Made by a program: the position numbers and the translations under genes. Of a DNA stretch of 64,000 nt, positions 4,770 through 50,869 are shown in pieces; positions within the stretch are counted from its first letter, which is position 1, and every line of letters starts with the position of its first letter. A model generated the notes under the pieces. The model saw only the letters and a program-made list of their open reading frames with translations, did not search any database and was not told the DNA's origin. The DNA comes from Hemiscyllium ocellatum. Lineage: Eukaryota. Where the stretch lies: the NCBI RefSeq assembly GCF_020745735.1, contig NW_026868127.1, forward strand, positions 1 to 64,000, given 5' to 3'.

Positions 4770-6808
4770 GTTTGTACAGATCCAGCTGGTTCGATCCTCA
4801 CAGAGCCCCAGTTTATTTGGACTGTTCAGTAATGTGGAAATGTCGATGGTGGACTGGGGTACACCTGATAAAGGAGCAGCGCTTCAGAAGCTTGTGATTT
4901 CAAATGAATCAGTTGGGCTAGAACCTGGTGTAGTGAGTCCTCTGACTTTGTATTGTTCAGGCACAGTGAAACAGCTGCTTTCTAGTTACTATGGAGGACT
5001 TGCACAGCTGCTGAAGACTATGGGTAATGACTCCTTCCATTAGCCGCAAACACACCAGTAGTCATTCCAGTGGATTCCAGTGGGAATGACCAATCAGTTG
5101 CTTTGACCTAGTTCCCCAGTTAATCAGGCCATGGCTGACCTGGAATACATTCTCCCTTTGTCCTGTAAACCGTACTGCCCTGAGAAAATGGATATTGAAA
5201 CCCAACCTCAACAGCTTTTTATTTTGGATTGAGGGTTCCAGATTTCCATCACTCTGTCGGAAAGAAATTTTCCTGAAATCGTCTGAATTACAATTTTAAC
5301 AACCCTCTTGTTCTGGACTCGGACTGGAGAAAGCAATTTACATCAACACTGTTCATCATCTCTGGGGAAAAGTCTGACTGATGTAACCTGTTCTCTCTCA
5401 TTAACAGTTTCTGATCTGAAGGTGACATCACAGGCTGGACACTGAGAGGGTGGTTCCTGTTATCGGGCAGACGAGGACTGGAGGGCAGGTTTAACACAAA
5501 CCAGTCTCCAGTTTAAAGGGAAGGAGGGTTTTCTTGCTGAGGGTTGATAGTCTGTGGAATTTTCTTCTCTACATGGGGATGGAGGTTCACTCATGGAGTT
5601 GGCACAAGGTTACAGTCGACAGACTTTTTGATGAACAAGGCAATTAAGGATAATGGGAGGGGGTGGGGAAGCAGAACGTACGGGCGAGACCATAACCAGA
5701 TGAGCAGTGATCTTCTTCATTGGCACAGCAGCTCCCAAAAGGCCTGCTCCTGCTCCTAGGTCCTATGTTCTGACAGAGGCTGCAGCAATCCTGGACCCCC
5801 ATCTTTCTTTGTCACTCACTGACAAAAATATAATTTTAAAATGAAAATTATTTTTTTGAACAAGACCAACTCAATTCTTGTTGCAGTCATTTTCTTTGCT
5901 GGCTTTTAATTTCAACAGGGTTTTAGCAACACGTCATTTGTCTTATGTTGCAGTGGAGACAGACACAAGGCAGTGAGGCCTCAGAGAGCACCGAGAGCTT
6001 TCACTCTGCACAACAAGGCTGTCAGCACAAGCATCTGGTGACAGAATTGTAGGGGGTTGAAAAGGAGAGAGTCACGGAGAAAAGAGACCTTATAGTTCAA
6101 AATAAAACCTCTTCATATATTCCCACACTTTAATGAATTAATGTTAGAGGATTAGAAACCCAGAACGGTGAGAGTGTGCTGGCTCAGAGGCTAAAAGGCA
6201 GAGAGCAAGGAGCTGCATTATTCCTTCTCATTATTATTTCTGCTTCATCATTGGTGAGCTTCATAAATATTGCCCACCCCCAGTTGCTTGGACTAAGTTC
6301 TTTGCTGAGCCAGATCATAGGGTCATTAAAAATGGATCATGTCACGGTGGGGCAGGAGTCACAGACCAGGCTCCCTCGCCAAAAGAACATTTGTGGACAT
6401 CACATTGAATTTCATGTCTTTTTTTGTACAAATTCCAGCGCCTTCCTTTCCAGATATTACATGGCTCACCACCGCCCTCTCCAGGACAATTAGGGGAAGG
6501 CAACCAATAACCAACACGTCAACGCCCGCCCCATCCCGGGAGAAATCAGGAGAAATGATGTAAAATTAAAATGATCAAATTGGTGAGGCTTGAATTCATC
6601 TCTTTGAAAGACTGGACTCTCGGTCAGAAACAGAGCCATGACATGGGTGAACCTGGTTTGTCAGATTGAAAGGTGGAGAGTCCTTTGGATTGACGCTGGG
6701 ATCAGCAAAAAAATGAATTGCACTCAAAGATTGAACAAACAGCTATCAAAGTGGGTCACCAAACTGCAGAGTACAGCACTTGCAGCGACGCGAGCAACGC
6801 GTCCCCAC

Positions 6809-11929: not shown

Positions 11930-12445
11930 CCCAGGTCTAATTTATGGAATATTTATTACCCAAACCCTGTGGAATTGTTATTTTGAGTTCCAAGATTCTG
12001 CTGATCATATTGATCAATAGAGTGACCCCAGTGACCCTGATCTGAATTGCTTGGCTCAGGATCTTGCTGTCCCTGATGGATGGGTTGGTGTGGAGGGGGA
12101 ATTGCCATCAGAATATTTTGTACCAGGGATGGATCAAGTTAGTATAGTGGGTGACAAGGTGGCTCAGTGGTTAGCACTGCTTCTTCATAGTGCCAGGGAC
12201 CTGGGTTCGATCCCTGCCTCAGGAAAATATCTATGTGGATTTTGCACATTCTCTCCAAATACAAATCAAATGCTGTATGGAATATTAACTTTGCAAACCC
12301 TGTGGGATTGTTATTCTGGGTAGTAAGATCCTGCTGGTCAAATTGATCAATAAAATGCGAACTGAACTGCTTGGCTCGGGATCTTGCTGTGCTGAAAGGA
12401 TGTGTTGGTGTTCAGGGGAATTCCCATCAGATTATTGTGTTCCCC
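11930..12445. repeat. imperfect ~190 bp tandem duplication separated by a SINE head fragment (~12150-12260)
   Basis: tatggaatatt..caaaccctgtgg..attgttatt..ttgatcaata..gcttggctc.ggatcttgctgt..ggggaatt.ccatcaga present at ~11945-12115 and ~12278-12432. Confidence 0.8.
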
Positions 12446-12584
12446 ATTGCCCCCTCTATTCTCCCCTTCCTGCTCCATACCTGGGGGTGGGGTGGAGCTT
12501 TTCACTTCATACACCTATCCCTGAGGCTTCAGCTCGGGCCATTCCCAAAGCACACACAGAGACAGAGACTGAATCTTCTTCATC

Positions 12585-12590
12585 TTTATT
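12585..12590 (-). terminator. polyadenylation signal AATAAA of cluster 1 transcript
   Basis: TTTATT on plus, ~490 nt past the C1 stop, followed by a GT-rich tract; conserved at 62925-62930 in cluster 2. Confidence 0.7.
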
Positions 12591-13081
12591 CCCTTTTCCA
12601 GATTGACATTGACAGAAAACAGTCAGCAATTAACAGCCCAGACAGAGGAAGCTGCTCAAATTCACAGCCACAATGGAGCTTGAGGAAAACACTTGTGGAG
12701 AATTTCTCAATAACATGAGAATCCTGTCCCTTTAAACAGTGACAAAACCTTAAATTGGAACTGGCGGCTGAGCAGAAAGGAGGTCTGTTTTACTGAAACA
12801 GAGACTTTTGAGGTTCACATTGTTTTTGCACAGCTGACAGTCTTTAGCACTGTCCCCATCAAACACATCCAGGTCAGGGAATGCATGGGACTAGATAAAG
12901 AGTAAAGTTTTCTCTACACTATCCCAACAACCAGCCTTAACCCCTGAAGCTCAGAAGTATCTCCAAGCCAGTCCTGAGAAGGAAGAGAGTTGAAATTCAG
13001 TGCTGAAAATGACCTTTGACCTGCCAGCTCAGCACTGTTCTATTTAAAGTTGTGTCTCCTCTGTGGACTGTCTCAAACACT

Positions 13082-21505: not shown

Positions 21506-22480
21506 CCTGGAATACCATGAGCACAGGAAGTGTGGTCAGTGACAGCAGTTGGAACTCCGGGTTTCGGAGCTTGAGCAGCAGCTGGTGTCAGTGAGGAGCG
21601 TCCGTGAGGCTGAGAGCTCCGTAGAGAGCACGTTTCTAGATGTGATCACTCTGCAGCTTCAGAGTATGCAGGGAGAGAGGGAATGGGGGAGCAGCAGACA
21701 GTCCAAAAGGACCAGGCAGCTAGTACAGGAATCCCATGAGTGTATCTCACTCTCCAACCAGGATTCAGTTCAGAATCCTGATCAGAATGATGGTTCATCT
21801 GGGGCGTGCAGCCAGAGCCAAGTCCATGGCACCATGGGGGGCTCAGCTGTATAGGGGGGCACAAGGAAGACTGGAAGAGTGAGAGTGAGAGGAGATTCGA
21901 GAGTGAGGGCATCGATAGGTGTTTCTGCAGCTGCAGATGGGAATCCAGGATGGTGTGTTATCTCCCTGGTGCCAAGGTGAAGGATGTCACTGAGCTGCTG
22001 CAGAGCACCCTGAGGGGAGAGGGGGAACAGGCAGCAGTCATGGTCCACATCGGTCCCAGTGACAGCGGGAGAAAAGGGATGTGGTCCTCCAGTCAGAATT
22101 TAGGGAGTTCCAGAGGGAATTAGCAGCAGGAGCTCAAAAGTAGGAATTTCCAAGATTACCCCCAGTGCCCCACACAACTGAGAATAGAAAGAGGAGGATA
22201 GCACAGGTGACTGTGGAACTGAAAAGACAGTCCAGGAGGAAGGTATTTCGATTATTTTAACATTGGGACTGGCTTTGGGGGGAGATGGACATGTACAGAC
22301 CAGACGGGTTGCTCCTGAACAGACCTGGGACTGAGTTCCTTTGGGGTGATTTACTCGTGCTGTTGGAGAGGGTTTAAACTATCTTGGCCTGTGGGATCCA
22401 GGAGGGAATACCAGAGAGGAACACAGAGGTGCACAGAATCCTGGGAGAGATAGATAGCACCAGAATAAGGAATAGAACTT
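21506..22480 (+). mobile_element. CR1 ORF1 fragment (coiled coil and SGNH esterase)
   Basis: ELRVSELEQQL... then RMVCYLPGAKVKDV...VMVHIG, matching CR1 ORF1 esterase motifs also seen at 40786-41010. Confidence 0.75.
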
Positions 22481-22689: not shown

Positions 22690-23141
22690 CGAGGATGAGG
22701 AACGTGAGTTATGAAGATAGACTGAAGACATTGGGACTGTTTTCCTCAGAGAAGAGAAGGCAGAGAGGAGATTTGATCGAGAAATTCAAAATCAGGAGGG
22801 GTCTGAACAGAGTAAACCAGGAGAAAATGTTCCCACCTGAGAAAGAATTGAGAGGGAGAGGCCATGGATTGAAAATAATTGGTAAAAGAGGCGAAAGTGA
22901 GATGGGGGAAAAACATTTTCAGCCAGTGGGTGGTTAAGGTGTGGAATGCACTGCCTGAGAGTGTGGTGGAGGCAGCTTCAATTAAAACATTCCGAAGGGA
23001 ATGAGACTGTTATTCAAAAAGGAACAATGTGCAGGGTGACAGGGAGAAGGCAGCAGAATGACACTCAGTGAATTGCTCATTCAGAGAGCCGGTCCAGACA
23101 GGATGAGTTGAATGGCCTCCTTGTGCACTGAAACGATTCTG
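22690..23141 (+). mobile_element. CR1/L2-type LINE 3' fragment, shared with 54180-54660
   Basis: RLKTLGLFSSEKRRQRGDLIE motif; tail gttgaatggcctccttgtgcactg. Confidence 0.8.
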
Positions 23142-23199
23142 TGATTGTGTGATTGAGCAGAGTTAAAGCTGGGGGAGGTGGGAGCTCGGTGTCTCACTG

Positions 23200-23201
<2 letters not shown>

Positions 23202-23231
<30 letters not shown>
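23202..23231. repeat. (CTG)10 trinucleotide repeat in J-C intron of cluster 1
   Basis: direct reading. Confidence 0.95.
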
Positions 23232-23601
23232 AGGTCAGTGAGATCAGAGACTGGGACAGGGAGCCAGAGCTCACATCAAACTCTGCCCCGTGTCCGTCAC
23301 ACTGAGACTGGCAGGAGGCTACTCACTGATTTCACTCCATGCTGCAGGAATGGGACCACAGGCTGCAAATGGACAGAGCTCCTCCACACGGTGAGTAAAA
23401 CTTACTGACTTATATCTTGCTGCTTAAGCAGGGCAATAGGACGACAGAAATACAGCTGGACACCCTGTTAGACACAGTGCTCCTCATTCAACCATTTCAT
23501 TCACTGCAGCTCCCCACTAACACCTGCATCAATTCAGCATTTGTGATTTAGAAAGTTTCAGTATTGAAAGGGTTAATAACGGAGGATTGAGGTTTACTTA
23601 C

Positions 23602-24111: not shown

Positions 24112-24410
24112 TCGAGGGTAGCTGTAATCCTGCATACAGTAATAGTCAGCGACATCCTCATTCTGAACGTTGCTGATTTTCAGGGTGAAACTGGTCCCTG
24201 ATCCACTGCCGGTGAATCGATCGGAGACTCCTGTGAATCGATTTGTTGCAGCATAGATCAGGAGAGAGGGTTTCTGACCTTCTCGCTGCTGGTACCAGGA
24301 AAGCTCATTGCTAACAGATTGACTGGCCGTACAGGTGAGTGTTGCGGTCTGGCCCAGTCCCACTGACAGCACCGGGGGAGACTGAGTCATGATGATGTCC
24401 CCACTGATAC
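24112..24410 (-). CDS. IGKV: kappa-type V exon V1
   Basis: ccctcag acceptor; [100 protein letters not shown]; open frame. Confidence 0.98.
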
Positions 24411-24596
24411 CTGAGGGATCAGAGAGAAACACAGTGAAGTCAGAACTGTCACAGAAAGAGCCGGTCAAATGAGAGATTGTTGGAGACACTGAGCATTCCT
24501 CTGGTTTCAGCATTTTCCCTTCAATCACAAGTCAGTGGAATTGGAGTGAAATGGAGAGCAACTAAAGATTCAAGGCGGAAGGAGAGAGATTTGTAC

Positions 24597-24645
24597 CTGC
24601 GACACAGAATGCCAGGGGCCAGATCAGCTGGATGTGTGAAATCAT
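24597..24645 (-). CDS. IGKV: leader exon of V1 (MISHIQLIWPLAFCVA-G)
   Basis: ATG, 49 nt, phase-1 GT donor, 186-nt intron to the V exon. Confidence 0.92.
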
Positions 24646-24703
24646 GGTGTGTGCTCCTGTCCCTGTGCCTGGTTCCTGATAAACTCTCCCTTCACTGGGC
24701 TCT

Positions 24704-24800
24704 GCTTTATAAAGCTGCAGCCTGTGAGAGTCTGACTGGGTGTTCCTCAGTATGTAAATGGCATCAGGTAGAGAGAGCCACGTCAGCCCCTCACACTTCC
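24704..24800 (-). promoter_or_regulatory. V1 promoter: ETS core GGAAGTG (24794-800), variant octamer ATTTACAT (24752-59), palindromic TATA GCTTTATAAAGC (24704-15)
   Basis: motif order and spacing resemble IgL promoters and are conserved in cluster 2. Confidence 0.7.
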
Positions 24801-26150: not shown

Positions 26151-26588
26151 CTCTGCTCTGCCCCACTAATGGATGTTAACCCTTGACCCCAGAAGCATGT
26201 CTTCTCCTGGAGTAAAGGCCCATTTCCACATTGACCAGGTTTTGGTATCTCTCAGGAAGATGGACAGATTCTTGTTAAATGAAGGGCAGTTCTGTGCTGT
26301 TGGCCTATTCTCACTGGGGACTGGTTTGGACACAAACCTCATTCCATGAAGGCCCAGCAGAGAGAGGAGATCCTCAGGCCATCAGTGTGAGCTGGAGGGA
26401 CAGCACAGGCTCTGACCCACTAACCCATCCTGTCCATTCACAACATGTTCCAATCCCTTCCCCTCTCCTTCCCCTTCTACGATCAGTCTCTGAGTCAGTG
26501 TGTTTTACTGGGATGAGGGTTGGACCATCACACAGTTACAACAGAAAGGAACTGAACCCCACACCCACCATGGTGTCCACACTGCACT

Positions 26589-29620: not shown

Positions 29621-29820
29621 AGCTTGGAGACAGAGCTGCTGCTGGATTCTGTTTCTGATCTCCGAGTGCAGGTGTATGTGTTTGTGAGAGAGTGACTGTC
29701 CTTTTTCCCCATCACTGTGCTGTTTCTGAAAAGAAAAATCCCAGAACCAGCCTCCTGTGCTGTCAGGTTCTTGGGAGTGCAGACAGTTCACAGTTTTCTC
29801 CCGTCTCAGTAACAAACATC

Positions 29821-30052
29821 CAGCTGCTCCGAGCTCTTTATTTCACTTCCTCTTTTGGTGAAGTTTCAACCTTGCGATCTGACAGTCTTTGCAGTTATTT
29901 TTTACACTGGGGCTTTCTGCTGTGGTCAGAATCTCTAATAATAAGTGTCCAATCAGTGACAATCACAGCAGCTAAGAGCAGTCAGGACTGAGGAGCCAGG
30001 CTCACTGGGAAACACATTGGGAAGATCAAAGCCATTCCCCTTCAGCTCCCAG
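29821..30052. promoter_or_regulatory. conserved non-coding island with EICE (TTTCACTTCC 29841-50), E-box (29821-26) and CCAAT (29949-53): candidate enhancer
   Basis: 9 differences in 232 nt versus the inverted copy 47311-47541; GGAAGTGAAA matches the Ets-IRF composite consensus. Confidence 0.6.
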
Positions 30053-30659
30053 TACAAATTCCATCCCTCTCCCTGAGCACTGCCTGCTGCTCAACCAGAC
30101 TCTTTACAAACTTGGCCTCATCTTTGGGGCTGATCTGAGCACCATATCCTCCATCTCACAAAGATCAGCAACTGAAAATCTCTGTCATGTGCATGGGACT
30201 CCAAACATGACCATACCAATGTTGCGCTTGCACACATCACAGCCACTGCCCTCCGTAACCTTCAGCTCATCCCAAATTCTGCTGCCCCATATCTAAACTC
30301 GTATCAAATCCCATTCCTCCAACCCCCTGCGCCCTGTGCCTACATTGGTTCCTGGTCCAGCAACACCTTGATTTTCAAATTCTCATCCTTGTTCTCAAGT
30401 CCCTCCCTGTCCTCCACTCTCCCTATCTCTGTAACCTCCTTCAAACTGCCTCACTCAGTGTGATCAACAATCTTGGATATATGGCTGTCTATTCCTTCAT
30501 CCAAGTCATTTAGAAATATCGTGAAATGCTGAGGTTCCAGCCCAATTCCCTGGGGACACCACTATCCAGATTTTGCTCATTGGAGAGCACACACATTATC
30601 CCTCCTCTCTGTCTCCTACCTCCAAACTAATTTCTGACCAAAGATAAATACTTTTCTCT

Positions 30660-31690
30660 AACTGGCGAGAATGGGAGAAAGCAGAGGGACATAGTGGAAG
30701 GATACTTGTCAGACTGGAGGCCTGAGTCTAGTGGAGTGCCTCAGGATTGATGCTGGGCCCATTATTGTTTGTTATCAATATCAATGATTTAGAAGACATT
30801 ACAATAGCCGGTATTGTGGACAATGAGGAAGGTTATCAGATATTGTAACAGGACCTTGATCAGCTGTGGAAGTGGGAAAAGAAATGATAAATTGAGTTTA
30901 ATGTAGATAAGTATGAGGTCTTGCATTTTGGAAAGTTAAATCAAGGTAGGAGTTTCATGGTGAATGGTAAGGCCTTCAGGACTGTAGTGAAACAGTGGGA
31001 TCTCAGAGTTCAGGTGCACAGTTCTCTGAAAGTTGAGTCACAGTTAGACAGGGCAGTGAAGAAGGCTTTTGGCACACTGGCCGTCATCAGTCAGGGCACT
31101 GGGTGTAGAAGTTGGGAAGTTATGTTTCAATTGTACATGACGTTGGTGAGGCTGCACTTGGAGTATTGTGTTCAGTTTTGGTCACCTTGTTATATGAAGG
31201 ATATTATTAAACTGGAAAGAGTGCAGAATAAATTTACAAGGATGTTGCCAGGTTTCAACATCTGAGTTTTTGGGAGAGTTTGGGCCAGCTAGGACATTTT
31301 TCTTAAGAATGTTGGAGACTAAAGGGGAATCTTTTAGAAGTGTATAAGATCTTGAGAAACATGGATAGGGTGAATGCACTCAGTCTTTGTCCCAGGGTTG
31401 GGGAATCAAGGCCTAGAGGGCATCAGTTGAAGGTTAGAATAAACGGGAACCTGAGGGGCATCATTTTTACACAGAAGGTGGTAGTCGTATGGAATGATTG
31501 AGGAGGGTACATGAACAACATTTAAAAGGTATTTGGACAAATACATAGATAGTATGTAATTTGAAGGATATGGGCCAAGTGCAGGGCAAATGGGGTTTGT
31601 GTGGATGGATATTTTGGTCAGCATGGTCTGGTTTGGGCCAAAGGGCCTGTATCTGTGCTGTAGGACTCGATGACTCTATGACTCTACAAT
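30660..31690 (+). mobile_element. CR1-type LINE RT/3' fragment
   Basis: ORF 30921-31265 LVRLHLEYCVQFWSPCYMKDIIKLERVQNKFTRMLPG. Confidence 0.88.
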
Positions 31691-45870: not shown

Positions 45871-47310
45871 TAATGACTTTGAACCTGATAGAGTTATGGT
45901 CACTATCGCCAAAATGCTCCAAACCACGCTTGACCATTCTGCAGTGTATCCACATTAGTTTCCAAAAGCAATCCTTTTCCTCATTGACACAGGGAGCAAG
46001 TACCTCATTCCTGTTGGACAAGGAGCTGAGGCACCTGAAAGGCTAAATCCAGGCTGCATCGACCTGTTCACTTTTGGTCACACCCTCCTGTCCCTGACCA
46101 CTGGCCATAATTTGAAGTATTTAACCTACAAGATGTAACTGTCTCCCCAAACACAGTGTCCAGGTAACTCTCCCCCTCCCTGATGTGTCACAGTGTTTGA
46201 AGCTCAGATTCCAGCTCATCAACTCTGAGCTGGAGTGCCTTGAGCAACCAACACTTGCTGTAGATGTGGTCACTCTGAGCTACAATGGGCTCCACCAGCT
46301 TCCCCATCGCAATTACACGTCACCTGGCCCTGTATATAGAAATTGTTTGAGGCGGTTTTAATTTGTATTTTTAAATTTCCTGTTGGTCTTTATTTTTTAA
46401 TCTGTAAAATATTTCTGTCAAGGAGACAGAGAAGGCTCCAGCACAGGAGGAGGCTGTTCAGCCCCTCGTGTCAGTGCTGGCTGTATATTAACCTCATTCA
46501 CAATGAACATCTCCATTGAATGTCTGTTGTCAGGAATTGATTGAATCTGTTTTTAGAGACAGGATGACTAACAAATGATTAACTAACATGAACTGTTCCG
46601 AGAGAGTCAGCATGGATTTACAAAGGTTCAAACATCTTTAACTAACCTGATTACACTTTGTTAGGAGCTCACTAATGTGGGATAGAAGGGAATGTTGATG
46701 GCTATTGTCCATAGGGAATTCCACAAGACATTTAAAAAGAGACATGGAATCAGATGGAATTTGAGAAATGCATTTATCTTGGGTCCAGAGCTAGGAGACA
46801 GAGAGGAGGGATAATGTGCACGTCCTCCAATGAGCAAGATGTGAATAGTGGTGTCCCCAGGGATCTGTGCTGGGACCTCAGCTTCACACAATATTTCTCA
46901 ATGACTTGGATGAAGAAATAGAGAACCATATTTCCAAGATTGTTGATCACTCTGAGTGAGGTGGTTTGGAGGGTGAGATGGGGAGGGTGGAAGGAGGCGA
47001 GAGGTTTGAGAACAAGGATGAGAACTTGCAAATCAAGATGTTGCTGGACTAGGAGCCAATGTTGGTCAGTGAGCACAAGGGGAGGGAATGGGGGAATGGG
47101 ACTTGGTGGGAGTTCGGATACTGGCAGCAGAGTTTGGGATGAGTTGATGTTTACCGAAGGTGGTGGCTGTGATGTGGGCCAGGATAACATTGGAATGGTC
47201 ATGTTTGGAGTCCCCATCACATAGCTGAGATTTGCAGTGTCTGATCTTTGTGATGTGGAGGATGTGGAGATCAGATCAGCCTCAAAGATGAATCTAAGGT
47301 AGTAAAGAGT

Positions 47311-47541
47311 CTGGGAGCTGAAGGGGATGGCTTTGATCTTTTCAATGTGTTTCCCAGTGAGCCTGGCTTCTCAGTCCTGACTGCTCTTAGCTGCTGTGAT
47401 TGTCACTGATTGGACACTTATTATTAGAGATTCTGACCACAGCAGAAAGCCCCAGTGCAAAAAATAACTGCAAAGACTGTCAGATCGCAAGGTTGAAACT
47501 TCACCAAGAGAGGAAGTGAAAGAAGGAGCTCAGAGCAGCTG
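47311..47541. promoter_or_regulatory. inverted copy of the EICE island (GGAAGTGAAA 47512-21, E-box 47536-41, ATTGG 47409-13)
   Basis: ~96% identical to 29821-30052; same ~5.2 kb distance from its leader. Confidence 0.6.
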
Positions 47542-48226
47542 GACCTTTGTTACTGAGACGGGAGAAAACTGTGAACCATCTGCACTCCCTGGAATCTGAC
47601 AGCACAAGAGGAGGCCATTCAGCCCATTGTGTCTGTGAGTGACCCAAGCAGTCCTACTACTCCTCTCTCTCCCCATAATCTAGCAAATCTTTCCTTTTCA
47701 GCTCGATCTTAATTGTCTCTTGTAGACCTGGGTAGACAGCGCAAGACTGCCCTTAATCTGGGTTCCAAATTGGTATCTCATTCATTCATTGGGAGACAAA
47801 CTGCCTGGGCTGGGAAATGGAGCTCAGGATCCTGAACATTCCCTCTCCCCTCCTGAGGAACACTTCATTCGGTTTTGCATATTCACTCGTGGGAAGTGGG
47901 CTTCACCAGCTGTCCCAGCATTTTCTACCCTGTCCCTAGTTACCCTGGAGAAGGCAGTGGGAAGCTGCCTTCTTGAATCACTGTAGTCCACAAGCTGTAA
48001 GTTGACTCACAATGCTCTTCAGGAGGGAATGCTAGTATTTTAACCCAGCAAGGCTGAGGGATCAACAACATATTTCCAAGTCAGGATGCTAAGCTTTTCC
48101 GAGGGGAAATTGCAGCTCATAGTGTTCCCATGTGTCTGCCGCTCCTGGTCTCCGAAATAGAAGTGGATGTGGGTTTGGAAGGAAACCAAAAGAAATGCGG
48201 ATGCTGTGAATCCGAGATAAAGATCA

Positions 48227-48399: not shown

Positions 48400-50050
48400 G
48401 TGAGTTTCTGCAGTGCATTTTACCGATAATACACACTTCTGCTACTGAGCATCGGGAATGGTGAGAGTGGATGCTTTGAGAATATGATGCCAATCAAGCA
48501 GGTTGCTTGGCTCTGGATGGTATCAAGCTTTTCGATTGGATGAGAAAGACATAGACAGGAATAGATTAGAGGGATACGGGCCAAATGCAGGCAAATGAGA
48601 CTCGTTCACTTCAGAAACCCTGGTCAGCATGGAATAGTTTGGCTTAAGGGTTTGTTTCTCTGCCATATGACTCTGTGACACTATCAGTCTATGAATGTTG
48701 TTGGAGCTGCACCTGTCCAGGCAAGTGGGGAGTATTTGCTCACACTCCTGACTTGGTTGACAGGCTTTGGGGGAATCAGGAGGTGAGTTACTCGATACAG
48801 TATTTCTAGCCTCTAACCTGCTCTTGTAACCACTATGCTTCTGTGGTGAGTCCAGTTGTATTTCTGGTCAATGGCATCTCAAGAATGTTGATAGTGGGGA
48901 TTCAGTGATGGTAATAGCATTGACTGTCAAGGGACGATGGTTAGATTGTCTCTTATTGCTGATGGTCATTGGCTGGCATTTGCATGACACCGATAGGAAA
49001 GACTGCTCCTGAGATGAAACCTGGATATTGTCCAGATATTGTTGTATTTGAACATGGACTGCTTCAGTATCTGTGGAGTTGAGAATGGTGCTGAACATTG
49101 TGAAATCTTTGGCAATCATCCCCATTTATGAGCTTGACTTTAGTTGCAATATCTGTCCAAAGTCTGTCCTATTCAGTACGGTGATAGTACCACACAACAC
49201 AATGGAGGGATTCTCAATGTGAAGGTCAAACTTTGTTTCTACAAGGACTGTGTGATGGTCACTCTTACCAATACTGTCAAGGATAGATGTACCTACAGCC
49301 ACAAGATTGGTGAGGGTGGGGTCAAGCATCTTTTTCCAAATTTTTGGTTCCTTCACCACCAGCTGCAGAGCCAGTCCTCAGCTACGTCCATGAGGAACCA
49401 ACCAGCTCGATCAGTAATGCTGCTGCCGAGCCACTCTCGGTGGTGGATATTGAAACCCCCCCACCCAGAGTACACTCTCTGCTGTCATCACCCTCAGTGC
49501 TTCCTCCAAATGTTGTTCAACATCCAGGAGAGACTGATTCATCAGCCGAGGGAGCAAGATATCTTGTAATCACCAGGAGGTTTCCTCGCCCATGTTTAAC
49601 TTAGTTTCATGAGTCTTCACGGGGTCCAGAGCCAACTTTGAGACTTCCCAGGGTAACTCCCTCCTGGCTGTAGACCACTGTGTCATCAGCTCTACTGGGT
49701 CTGCCTTTCTGGTGGGACAGGACACATGCAGGGACAGTGATGGTAGTGTCTGGGGCATTGTCTGTATGATTCTGTGAATATGACTGTGTCAGGCTGTTGC
49801 TTGACTAGTCTGTAAGACAGCTCTCCTGAATTTGGCCCTAGCTCCCAGATGTCAGTAAGGAGGATGGAGCAGGGTAGACAGGACTGTTTCTGTCATTGTC
49901 TTTTCTGTGTCTAGATCGATGCCTGTGGTCCGTCCGGTCTCATTTCTTTGTTGAAATATTGTCATAATTGATACAACTGAGAGCTTTGCTCGGCCATTTC
50001 AGAGGGCAGTTAAGGGTCAACCACATTGCTGGGGTACAGTTCCATGGACC
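48400..50050 (-). mobile_element. LINE endonuclease/RT fragments (second family)
   Basis: DSIGKSDHHTVLVETK; IQQYLDNIQ...CQPMTISNKR. Confidence 0.7.
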
Positions 50051-50869
50051 CTGCAGTACATTCTGTCCTCTCCCACTTCCCCATTGTTAATGTGGAAGGC
50101 TGGAGGTTGCCAGTAGGATATCCAACTGCAGGAGCTATCACAGCCCCCTGCACAATTTTGTCCCCACATTAAATCCACACAAATCTTGAAGTCACATAGC
50201 ACCTTCAATGTTCAAAACGGTCCGAGATGGTTCACAAAGTTGCAGTAAGAGGAATGGGGGAGGGGGTGAGGAACATAAGAACTAGGAGCAGGAGCAGGCA
50301 ATTCAGCCCCTAGAGCCCACTCCACCATTTAATACAATCATGGCTGATCCCATCTCAGACTCAACTCCACATTCCTGCCCACTCTCCATCATCCTTTAAC
50401 CCATTACCCATTAAATATCTGTCCATCTCCTCCTTGGTGTGAGACAGGGAAGGGACCACTCCATTTCAGAAAAGACTGACTGTGGAAGGGGAAGGAGAGG
50501 GGAAGGGATTGGAACATGTTGTGAATGGACAGGATGGGTCAGTAGGTCAGAGTCTGTCCTGTCCCTCCAGCTCACACTGATGGCCTGAGGATCTCCTCTC
50601 TCTGCTGGGCCTTCATGGAATGAGGTTTGTGTCCAAACCAGTCCCCAGTGAGAACAGGCCAACAGAACAGAACAGCACAGAACTGCCCTTCATTTCACAA
50701 GAATCGTCCATCTTCCCGAGACAGACCAAACCCTGGTCATTGTGGGAAATGGGGCTTTATTCCAGGAGAAGACAGGGGTCAAGGGGTAACATCCATTTGT
50801 GGGGCAGAGCAGAGGGAGATTTATCCTGCATTTAACTGTCACCACCCAGGACACTGTCAGAAAGAGAGA

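What the first reader, a model, noticed from the sequence alone, without database searches (positions are those of the whole stretch)
29751..30052. Perfect PU.1/IRF composite (EICE) plus E-box module conserved 5.2 kb upstream of both V genes: candidate shark kappa enhancer
29821-30052 and 47311-47541 are ~96% identical (9/232), whereas the adjacent shared TE flank is ~75-80%, and the sequence between island and promoter has been remodelled by different insertions. Both copies keep AGAGGAAGTGAAA (GGAAnnGAAA, the EICE consensus of the mammalian kappa 3' and lambda enhancers bound by PU.1/Spi-B with IRF4/8), a CAGCTG E-box exactly 14 bp away, and a CCAAT box. Because the pair is head-to-head, both modules lie inside the segment inverted by an inter-cluster join and would travel with their V. 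An upstream EICE enhancer per minilocus would be a distinct regulatory architecture; I cannot confirm from the sequence whether it has been described.
Basis: partly seen in the sequence, partly recalled or inferred. Interest (0 to 1): 0.8.

Follow-up and report, generated by a model that had tools for sequence, protein, structure and literature searches.

The report
Candidate upstream enhancer of shark kappa clusters
A roughly 280-bp non-coding block about 5 kb upstream of each of two shark antibody light-chain genes keeps a PU.1/IRF-type site and an E-box at fixed spacing in other clusters and another species, so it is probably each cluster's own B-cell switch, though no activity has been measured.

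Summary
29821-30052 and 47311-47541 differ at 9 of 232 columns (96.1%), while the distal flank is 77%. Both copies carry AGAGGAAGTGAAA and a CAGCTG 14 bp away.

The window holds two intact germline V-J-C kappa-type clusters head to head. The island lies 5.1-5.2 kb upstream of each V start codon.

It is not a dispersed repeat: its summed DNA depth matches the V gene and is 10-50 times below true TEs. It is not an exon: there are no splice joints and its RNA/DNA ratio is at background. Rfam finds no known RNA.

The island recurs 4.7-6.4 kb upstream of V in Chiloscyllium punctatum clusters. The E-box and the gap-free spacer are kept in 5 of 5 copies, and the exact Ets/IRF composite in 4 of 5.

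Two cautions apply. The window is a mosaic of about eight such 95-100% patches, including the leader intron, so gene conversion inflates the 96% contrast. One old copy (L004b) looks nearly neutral. The CCAAT and MEF2-like sites are not kept in divergent copies, and there is no NF-kB site.

Enhancer function is inferred from motifs only. This scan has noted the same module on many other pieces of this genome. I found no published description.

The parts
29765..30040 (-). Island, left copy (reads in the direction of its V gene on the minus strand)
   Evidence: 94-96% identical to the right copy with sharp edges; 94.9% to C. punctatum L001:3268-3615
47323..47597 (+). Island, right copy
29786..29951 (-). 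166-bp core, the best conserved part across divergent copies
   Evidence: 96-97% among winL, winR and L001; 84-85% vs L004a, where the distal part is 71%
29841..29850 (-). Ets/IRF composite GGAAGTGAAA (EICE consensus GGAANNGAAA), left
   Evidence: exact in 4 of 5 copies, GGAAATGAAG in L004b
47512..47521 (+). Ets/IRF composite, right
29821..29826 (.). E-box CAGCTG (E2A-type CASSTG), left; 14 bp from the composite
   Evidence: invariant in 5 of 5 copies; start-to-start distance 24 in 5 of 5
47536..47541 (.). E-box CAGCTG, right
29921..29926 (-). RUNX/CBF-type ACCACA, left (right copy 47436-47441)
   Evidence: kept in 4 of 5 copies; lies in the 50-bp stretch that is 96% identical to L004a
29935..29944 (-). 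MEF2-consensus TTATTATTAG, left (right copy 47418-47427)
   Evidence: YTAWWWWTAR occurs 3 times in the window, 2 of them here; kept only in the three close copies
29949..29953 (+). CCAAT box, left (ATTGG at 47409-47413 on the right)
   Evidence: present in the close copies, lost in L004a and L004b
30083..30661 (-). Distal flank, shared but drifted (right copy 46760-47324)
   Evidence: 77.4% L vs R; 80.7% vs L001; DNA depth below the island
24112..24645 (-). Left V gene: leader 24645-24597, intron 24596-24411, V exon 24410-24112, followed by a 12-spacer RSS
   Evidence: the splice is confirmed by RNA-run joints that skip 186 bases
52652..53185 (+). Right V gene: start codon 52652, V exon 52887-53185, open frame, followed by a 12-spacer RSS

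Best explanation
The island is a conserved non-coding regulatory module that belongs to each kappa-type V-J-C cluster, most likely a B-lineage enhancer.

Inferred mechanism: a Spi-family Ets factor (PU.1/Spi-B type) recruits IRF4/8 to GGAAGTGAAA. An E-protein binds the CAGCTG that is held exactly 14 bp away. RUNX-type and other factors bind the upstream block at 29892-29951. The assembled complex then acts over about 5 kb on the cluster's own V promoter to open and transcribe that cluster, and possibly to target hypermutation.

What is shown: the position, the linkage to clusters, the recurrence in other clusters and in another species, and the motif-level retention.

What is inferred: factor binding, B-cell specificity and the target gene.

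Patchy gene conversion among clusters of one subfamily keeps whole copies near-identical, on top of this motif-level constraint.
For: - The composite pattern occurs only at the islands: 2 found against 0.04 expected. In the fetched loci it occurs only at the island of L001 and the island of L004.
- The combination EICE + CASSTG + RUNX + MEF2 within 280 bp occurs nowhere else in the 64 kb.
- Summed DNA depth in organism A is 1,045-1,119 for the island, 638-1,668 for V, leader and promoter, and 12,000-62,000 for TEs.
- There is no other copy of the island in the window.
- L001: island 94.9%, against 86.8% for the V region and 80.7% for the flank, 6.4 kb upstream of V.
- L004a: exact EICE, E-box, spacing and RUNX site in a germline-joined cluster, 4.7 kb upstream. 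Its core is 84-85% identical against 71% for the distal part.
- All 7 of the L/R differences in 29817-29854 miss the 16 motif bases.
- Organism G contig: 94.7% on the island against 84.6% upstream of the promoter.
- Amniote Ig-lambda and kappa-3' enhancers use the same site types, and mutation showed them to be needed (PMC3972084).
Against: - There is no accessibility, binding or reporter data.
- The RNA/DNA depth ratio at the island equals that of neighbouring bins.
- Against L004b the island (67-80%) barely exceeds its flanks (about 72%), and that copy has lost the IRF half-site and the RUNX site.
- Other 95-100% patches include a plain intron, so high identity alone does not show function.
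- There is no NF-kB site or octamer, and MEF2 and CCAAT are not kept in divergent copies.
- The motifs were chosen after the fact. A single EICE has roughly 0.03 chance expectation per island.
Confidence: 0.55

Rival explanations
1. The island is a gene-conversion patch with no regulatory role of its own. Clusters of one subfamily exchange short tracts, which leaves a mosaic of near-identical patches. The motifs are then chance content of one such patch.
For: - About eight patches of 95-100% identity with sharp edges sit in a 70-88% background.
- These patches include the leader intron at 98-99% and J-proximal intron DNA.
- The island is about 95% identical among winL, winR and L001, but only 74-79% identical to the L004 copies, whose flanks are about 72%.
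- The island tree does not follow species: winR is as close to the C. punctatum L001 copy as to winL.
Against: - Conversion does not explain why, in L004a, the EICE, E-box, gap-free spacer and RUNX block survive while the distal part falls to 71% and the flanks become unalignable.
- It does not explain why the L/R differences avoid the motif bases.
- It does not explain why the four-motif set is unique in the 64 kb.
- Conversion and function are not mutually exclusive.
Confidence: 0.2
2. The island is a conserved cis-element of another kind: a promoter of an upstream non-coding or sterile transcript, a silencer, or a boundary element between head-to-head clusters.
For: - CCAAT and A/T-rich elements are present in the close copies.
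- The island lies at the outer edge of each cluster unit, facing its head-to-head neighbour, both in the window and in L004.
- Contigs from RNA libraries cover it in organisms D and G.
Against: - No joints start in the island, and the RNA-library contigs run colinear across its edge.
- The RNA/DNA depth ratio is 0.011-0.016 in X19, the same as neighbouring bins.
- CCAAT is lost in the divergent copies.
- There is no CTCF-type core.
Confidence: 0.13
3. The island is an old transposable-element fragment that was present in the ancestral cluster and copied along with it, carrying its own Ets/IRF-like promoter motifs. It may or may not have been co-opted.
For: - The V-proximal edge runs into a GGAGGCCATTCAGCCC-type repeat in winR, L004a and L004b.
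- TEs crowd the region.
Against: - The island depth tracks V, not the TEs.
- No island-like sequence accompanies other copies of that repeat in the window.
- In the fetched loci it is found only upstream of V.
Confidence: 0.07

Closest known systems
Amniote Ig-lambda enhancers (mouse E-lambda 2-4/3-1, human and chicken Ig-lambda enhancer)
   Same: Both have a composite PU.1-IRF4 site, an E2A-type E-box downstream of it, and a MEF2 consensus upstream. The order MEF2, then Ets/IRF, then E-box matches the order described for the human enhancer (PMC3972084).
   Different: - The shark island lies upstream of V, not downstream of C.
- It has no NF-kB site.
- The MEF2 site is kept only in the close copies.
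- The E-box is 14 bp from the composite, not about 50 bp.
- A RUNX block lies between the MEF2 and Ets/IRF sites.
- Sequence homology was not tested.
- There is one element per V-J-C cluster.
Mammalian Ig-kappa 3' enhancer core
   Same: Both have a PU.1-IRF4 composite next to an E-box (PMC3972084 Fig. S5 legend). The shark light chains here are kappa-type.
   Different: The mammalian element is 3' of C-kappa and serves a whole translocon locus with an NF-kB site. The shark island is 5' of V and there is one per minilocus.
Chicken Ig-lambda 3'Core (DIVAC element)
   Same: Both combine an E-box, a CBF/RUNX site and a PU.1-type site.
   Different: The chicken sites are putative, and that element was defined by its hypermutation-targeting activity, which is untested here. 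A C/EBP site was not looked for here.

Membership tests
Ig light-chain enhancers with an Ets-IRF composite (lambda enhancers, kappa 3' enhancer) | Composite GGAANNGAAA site | tested here: met
   Exact in winL, winR, L001 and L004a; one change in the IRF half in L004b
Ig light-chain enhancers with an Ets-IRF composite (lambda enhancers, kappa 3' enhancer) | E2A-type E-box (CASSTG) close by | tested here: met
   CAGCTG in 5 of 5 copies, separated by a 14-bp gap-free spacer
Ig light-chain enhancers with an Ets-IRF composite (lambda enhancers, kappa 3' enhancer) | MEF2 site | tested here: inconclusive
   YTAWWWWTAR is present in the three close copies only
Ig light-chain enhancers with an Ets-IRF composite (lambda enhancers, kappa 3' enhancer) | NF-kB site | tested here: not met
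   No GGGRNNYYCC or relaxed form in any of the five copies
Ig light-chain enhancers with an Ets-IRF composite (lambda enhancers, kappa 3' enhancer) | Location in the J-C intron or downstream of C | tested here: not met
   The island is 4.7-6.4 kb upstream of V in all clusters seen
Ig light-chain enhancers with an Ets-IRF composite (lambda enhancers, kappa 3' enhancer) | B-cell-specific enhancer activity; PU.1/IRF4 and E2A occupancy | not testable with these tools
   No chromatin or reporter data are reachable
Ig light-chain enhancers with an Ets-IRF composite (lambda enhancers, kappa 3' enhancer) | Sequence homology to the amniote enhancers | not tested
Dispersed repeat / transposable element | Copy number far above the linked gene family; copies at unrelated sites | tested here: not met
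   Island summed depth is about 1,100, against 638-1,668 for V and 12,000-62,000 for TE bins. There are no extra copies in the window or the loci. The tool warns that summed depth is only a relative guide.
Exon or structured RNA gene | Splice joints, RNA enrichment, or a match to a known RNA family | tested here: not met
   No joints start in the island, and the RNA/DNA ratio is at background. Rfam gives 0 matches at E<=1. The copies differ by indels of 1 and 8 bp.
Gene-conversion tract | Sharp identity steps, patches over plainly non-functional DNA, and divergence that is discordant between pairs | tested here: met
   it contributes to the identity contrast but does not explain the motif-level retention

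The most novel reading that the evidence does not exclude
The island is the cartilaginous-fish version of an ancestral jawed-vertebrate Ig light-chain enhancer core (Ets/IRF composite + E-box + MEF2/RUNX), placed upstream and carried one per cluster. It drives both transcription and hypermutation targeting. Its retention upstream of a germline-joined VJ gene fits a role beyond recombination. Rare, stochastic activation of one such element would then explain how a shark B cell expresses one cluster out of many.
Probability: 0.15. Interest if true: 0.8.

Novelty: new variant of a known kind. Interest (0 to 1): 0.58.

Why it matters
How sharks choose and activate one Ig cluster among dozens to hundreds is an open question, and in the papers I could search no cis-regulatory element of a shark light-chain cluster is described. 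This island is a defined 166-280 bp candidate with two mutable sites, which makes the question directly testable by ATAC-seq, reporter assays, DT40 hypermutation assays and single-cell pairing of open islands with the expressed cluster. If the element is active, it would show that the Ets/IRF plus E-box logic of amniote light-chain enhancers predates the translocon organisation.

Tried and rejected
- **Exon or abundant transcript.** This was prompted by RNA runs holding up to 65% of the island's words. I rejected it: the contigs are colinear with the genome, there are no joints, depth is about one ten-thousandth to one two-thousandth of the V exon, and the RNA/DNA ratio equals that of neighbouring bins.\n- **Dispersed repeat.** Rejected on depth and on the lack of other copies.\n- **Known RNA family.** None found.\n- **Deeper species.** Loci for Heterodontus, Cetorhinus, Hemiscyllium and Scyliorhinus torazame were located, but no DNA was returned because the files are too large. 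Conservation beyond bamboo-shark relatives therefore rests only on coded run shares.\n- **L002 and L003.** These do not reach far enough upstream to include the island position.\n- **L005.** It was fetched as a control for a different isotype but proved to be a kappa pseudogene cluster.\n- **Metagenome scan for the core.** 0 hits.\n- **Literature.** Searches for a described shark IgL enhancer found nothing relevant; one search failed because a term was too short.

Full report
**What is in the window.**
The window holds two light-chain clusters arranged head to head as a large inverted duplication, about 12.5-30.7 kb against 46.8-63 kb.

The left cluster reads on the minus strand:
- TATA-like box near 24712
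- leader 24645-24597
- intron 24596-24411
- V exon 24410-24112, with a 12-spacer RSS
- J at about 23637-23601, with a 23-spacer RSS
- C exon at about 13400-13082

The right V (start codon 52652, exon 52887-53185) is also open and has an RSS. RNA-run contigs confirm the leader-V splice. The closest V proteins are from Chiloscyllium punctatum, at up to 92% identity, so the source is probably an orectolobiform shark.

- 29821-30052 against 47311-47541 is 96.1% identical, with 8 mismatches and 1 gap in 232 columns. The distal flank is 77.4%.
- The island has sharp edges. There is no homology on the V-proximal side. On the distal side there is a roughly 50-bp indel and then about 80% identity for 550 bp.
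- AGAGGAAGTGAAA occurs only in the two islands.
- The composite GGAANNGAAA-N14-CAGCTG occurs only there, with 0.04 expected by chance.
- The Ets/IRF site is 5,205 bp (left) and 5,140 bp (right) upstream of the start codons.

**Context that weakens the headline contrast.**
Along the duplication, identity is a mosaic. Patches of 95-100% lie at 12545-12700, the C exon, 21528-21620, 22943-23340, J, 24151-24720, 26314-26489 and the island, all set in a 70-88% background. The V patch includes the leader intron at 98-99%. Patchy gene conversion is therefore at work, and high identity by itself is not proof of function.

**What the island is not.**

*Not a dispersed repeat.* In a DNA run of the best-holding organism, summed word depths compare as follows:

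| Region | Summed word depth |
|---|---|
| Island | 1,045-1,119 |
| V, leader and promoter | 638-1,668 |
| Poorly conserved cluster DNA | 200-340 |
| True TEs in the same stretch | 12,000-62,000 |

The tool warns that this depth is only a relative guide. There is no further copy of the island in the window.

*Not an exon.* RNA runs do hold island words. However, the contigs are colinear with the genome across the island edge, no joints start in the island, and the RNA/DNA depth ratio (0.011-0.016 in X19) equals that of neighbouring bins. V exons are 10^4-fold deeper.

*Not a known RNA.* Rfam finds nothing.

**Other clusters and species.**
- **L001.** In this C. punctatum contig the V protein is only 76% identical to the window's. 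The island is 94.9% identical over 350 bp and lies 6.4 kb upstream of V. The V region is 86.8% identical and the distal flank 80.7%.
- **L004.** This is a more distant cluster (V 85%, C 78% at the DNA level). It has one copy 4.7 kb upstream of V and a second, inverted copy 3.6 kb further upstream, so the head-to-head layout recurs. This cluster is germline-joined VJ.
- **Coded runs.** Runs of five organisms hold 75-90% of the island words in DNA. A contig of organism G is 94.7% identical on the island, against 84.6% just upstream of the promoter.

**Footprint.**
In the five-copy alignment:

| Feature | Copies that keep it |
|---|---|
| CAGCTG | 5 of 5 |
| Distance from Ets/IRF site to E-box, with no gaps | 5 of 5 |
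| Exact GGAAGTGAAA | 4 of 5 (L004b has GGAAATGAAG) |
| ACCACA (RUNX type) | 4 of 5 |
| MEF2 consensus | 3 of 5 (the close copies only) |
| CCAAT | 3 of 5 (the close copies only) |
| NF-kB, octamer, EBF or CTCF-type site | none |

- Conservation among the divergent copies peaks at 80-87% over 29786-29859 and at 79-83% over 29902-29951. It falls to 52-67% at the edges.
- The 166-bp core is 84-85% identical to L004a, against 71% for the distal part.
- Between the left and right copies, 7 of the 16 differences lie in 29817-29854, and all of them miss the 16 motif bases.

**The counter-evidence.**
Against L004b, identity is about 72% along 1.6 kb, and the island (67-80%) barely rises above that. 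That copy has also lost the IRF half-site and the RUNX site, so it may be decaying. The near-identity among winL, winR and L001 therefore owes much to conversion within a subfamily. The motif-level retention in L004a is the better sign of constraint.

**Reading.**
The site set matches what mutation analysis showed to matter in amniote Ig-lambda enhancers and the kappa 3' enhancer (PMC3972084). I therefore read the island as a per-cluster B-lineage enhancer, at about 0.55 confidence, with conversion superimposed.

Its retention upstream of a germline-joined gene argues for a role in transcription or hypermutation, not only in recombination accessibility. That rests on a single case.

One C. punctatum cluster colinear with winL (L005) has a frameshifted V and lacks the island where it is expected. 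This is suggestive, but it is one case in a draft assembly.

However, inter-cluster joining in sharks is not supported by the literature (PMC3014032).

**Novelty.**
I found no published description of this element. This scan has flagged the same module on many other pieces of this genome, and one follow-up reached a similar verdict. Those notes were used as leads only.

Noticed in passing
window 26202-26489 and 50473-50760; L001:8367-8651; L003:32-320; L005 about 12330-12660: A second conserved non-coding block of about 290 bp lies about 1.6-1.8 kb upstream of V. It is 93-98% identical among clusters and is kept even in the pseudogene cluster L005. It has no Ets/IRF composite, and its function is unknown.
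   Followed up: partly
L004:10380-10620: This C. punctatum kappa cluster is germline-joined: V runs straight into J (…[23 protein letters not shown]…) with no RSS, matching protein P0027. Its J-C intron is only about 3.4 kb, against about 10 kb in the window.
   Followed up: yes
L005:14180-14860 and L005:8327: This C. punctatum cluster is colinear with the window's left cluster and has a dead V, with two 1-bp insertions and a 22-bp deletion across CDR1/FR2. Homology breaks 112 bp short of the expected island position, and no island is found in the 4.1 kb upstream.
   Followed up: partly
window 24411-24596 vs 52701-52886: The leader intron is 98-99% identical between clusters whose background identity is 70-88%. 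This is a sign of gene conversion, not constraint.
   Followed up: partly
window 24757-24764 (minus strand): The V promoter carries ATTTACAT, one base off the octamer, about 45 bp upstream of the TATA-like TTTATAAAG. The only exact octamer in the window is at 48978-48985, in the right copy only.
   Followed up: no
window 47599-47640; L004 about 5297-5310 and about 975-990: The V-proximal edge of the island continues into a GGAGGCCATTCAGCCC-type repeat in winR, L004a and L004b. An old TE therefore abutted the element before these clusters diverged. winL and L001 have replaced it.
   Followed up: partly
runs X32 (65 Mb) and X33 (149 Mb): Very small DNA runs hold 75-80% of the island's sampled words. 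This implies either multi-copy sequence or a targeted library, and I did not resolve which.
   Followed up: no
protein P0012: An 89-aa shark-like kappa V fragment is filed under a Salmonella enterica assembly on a 299-bp contig. This is almost certainly contamination.
   Followed up: no
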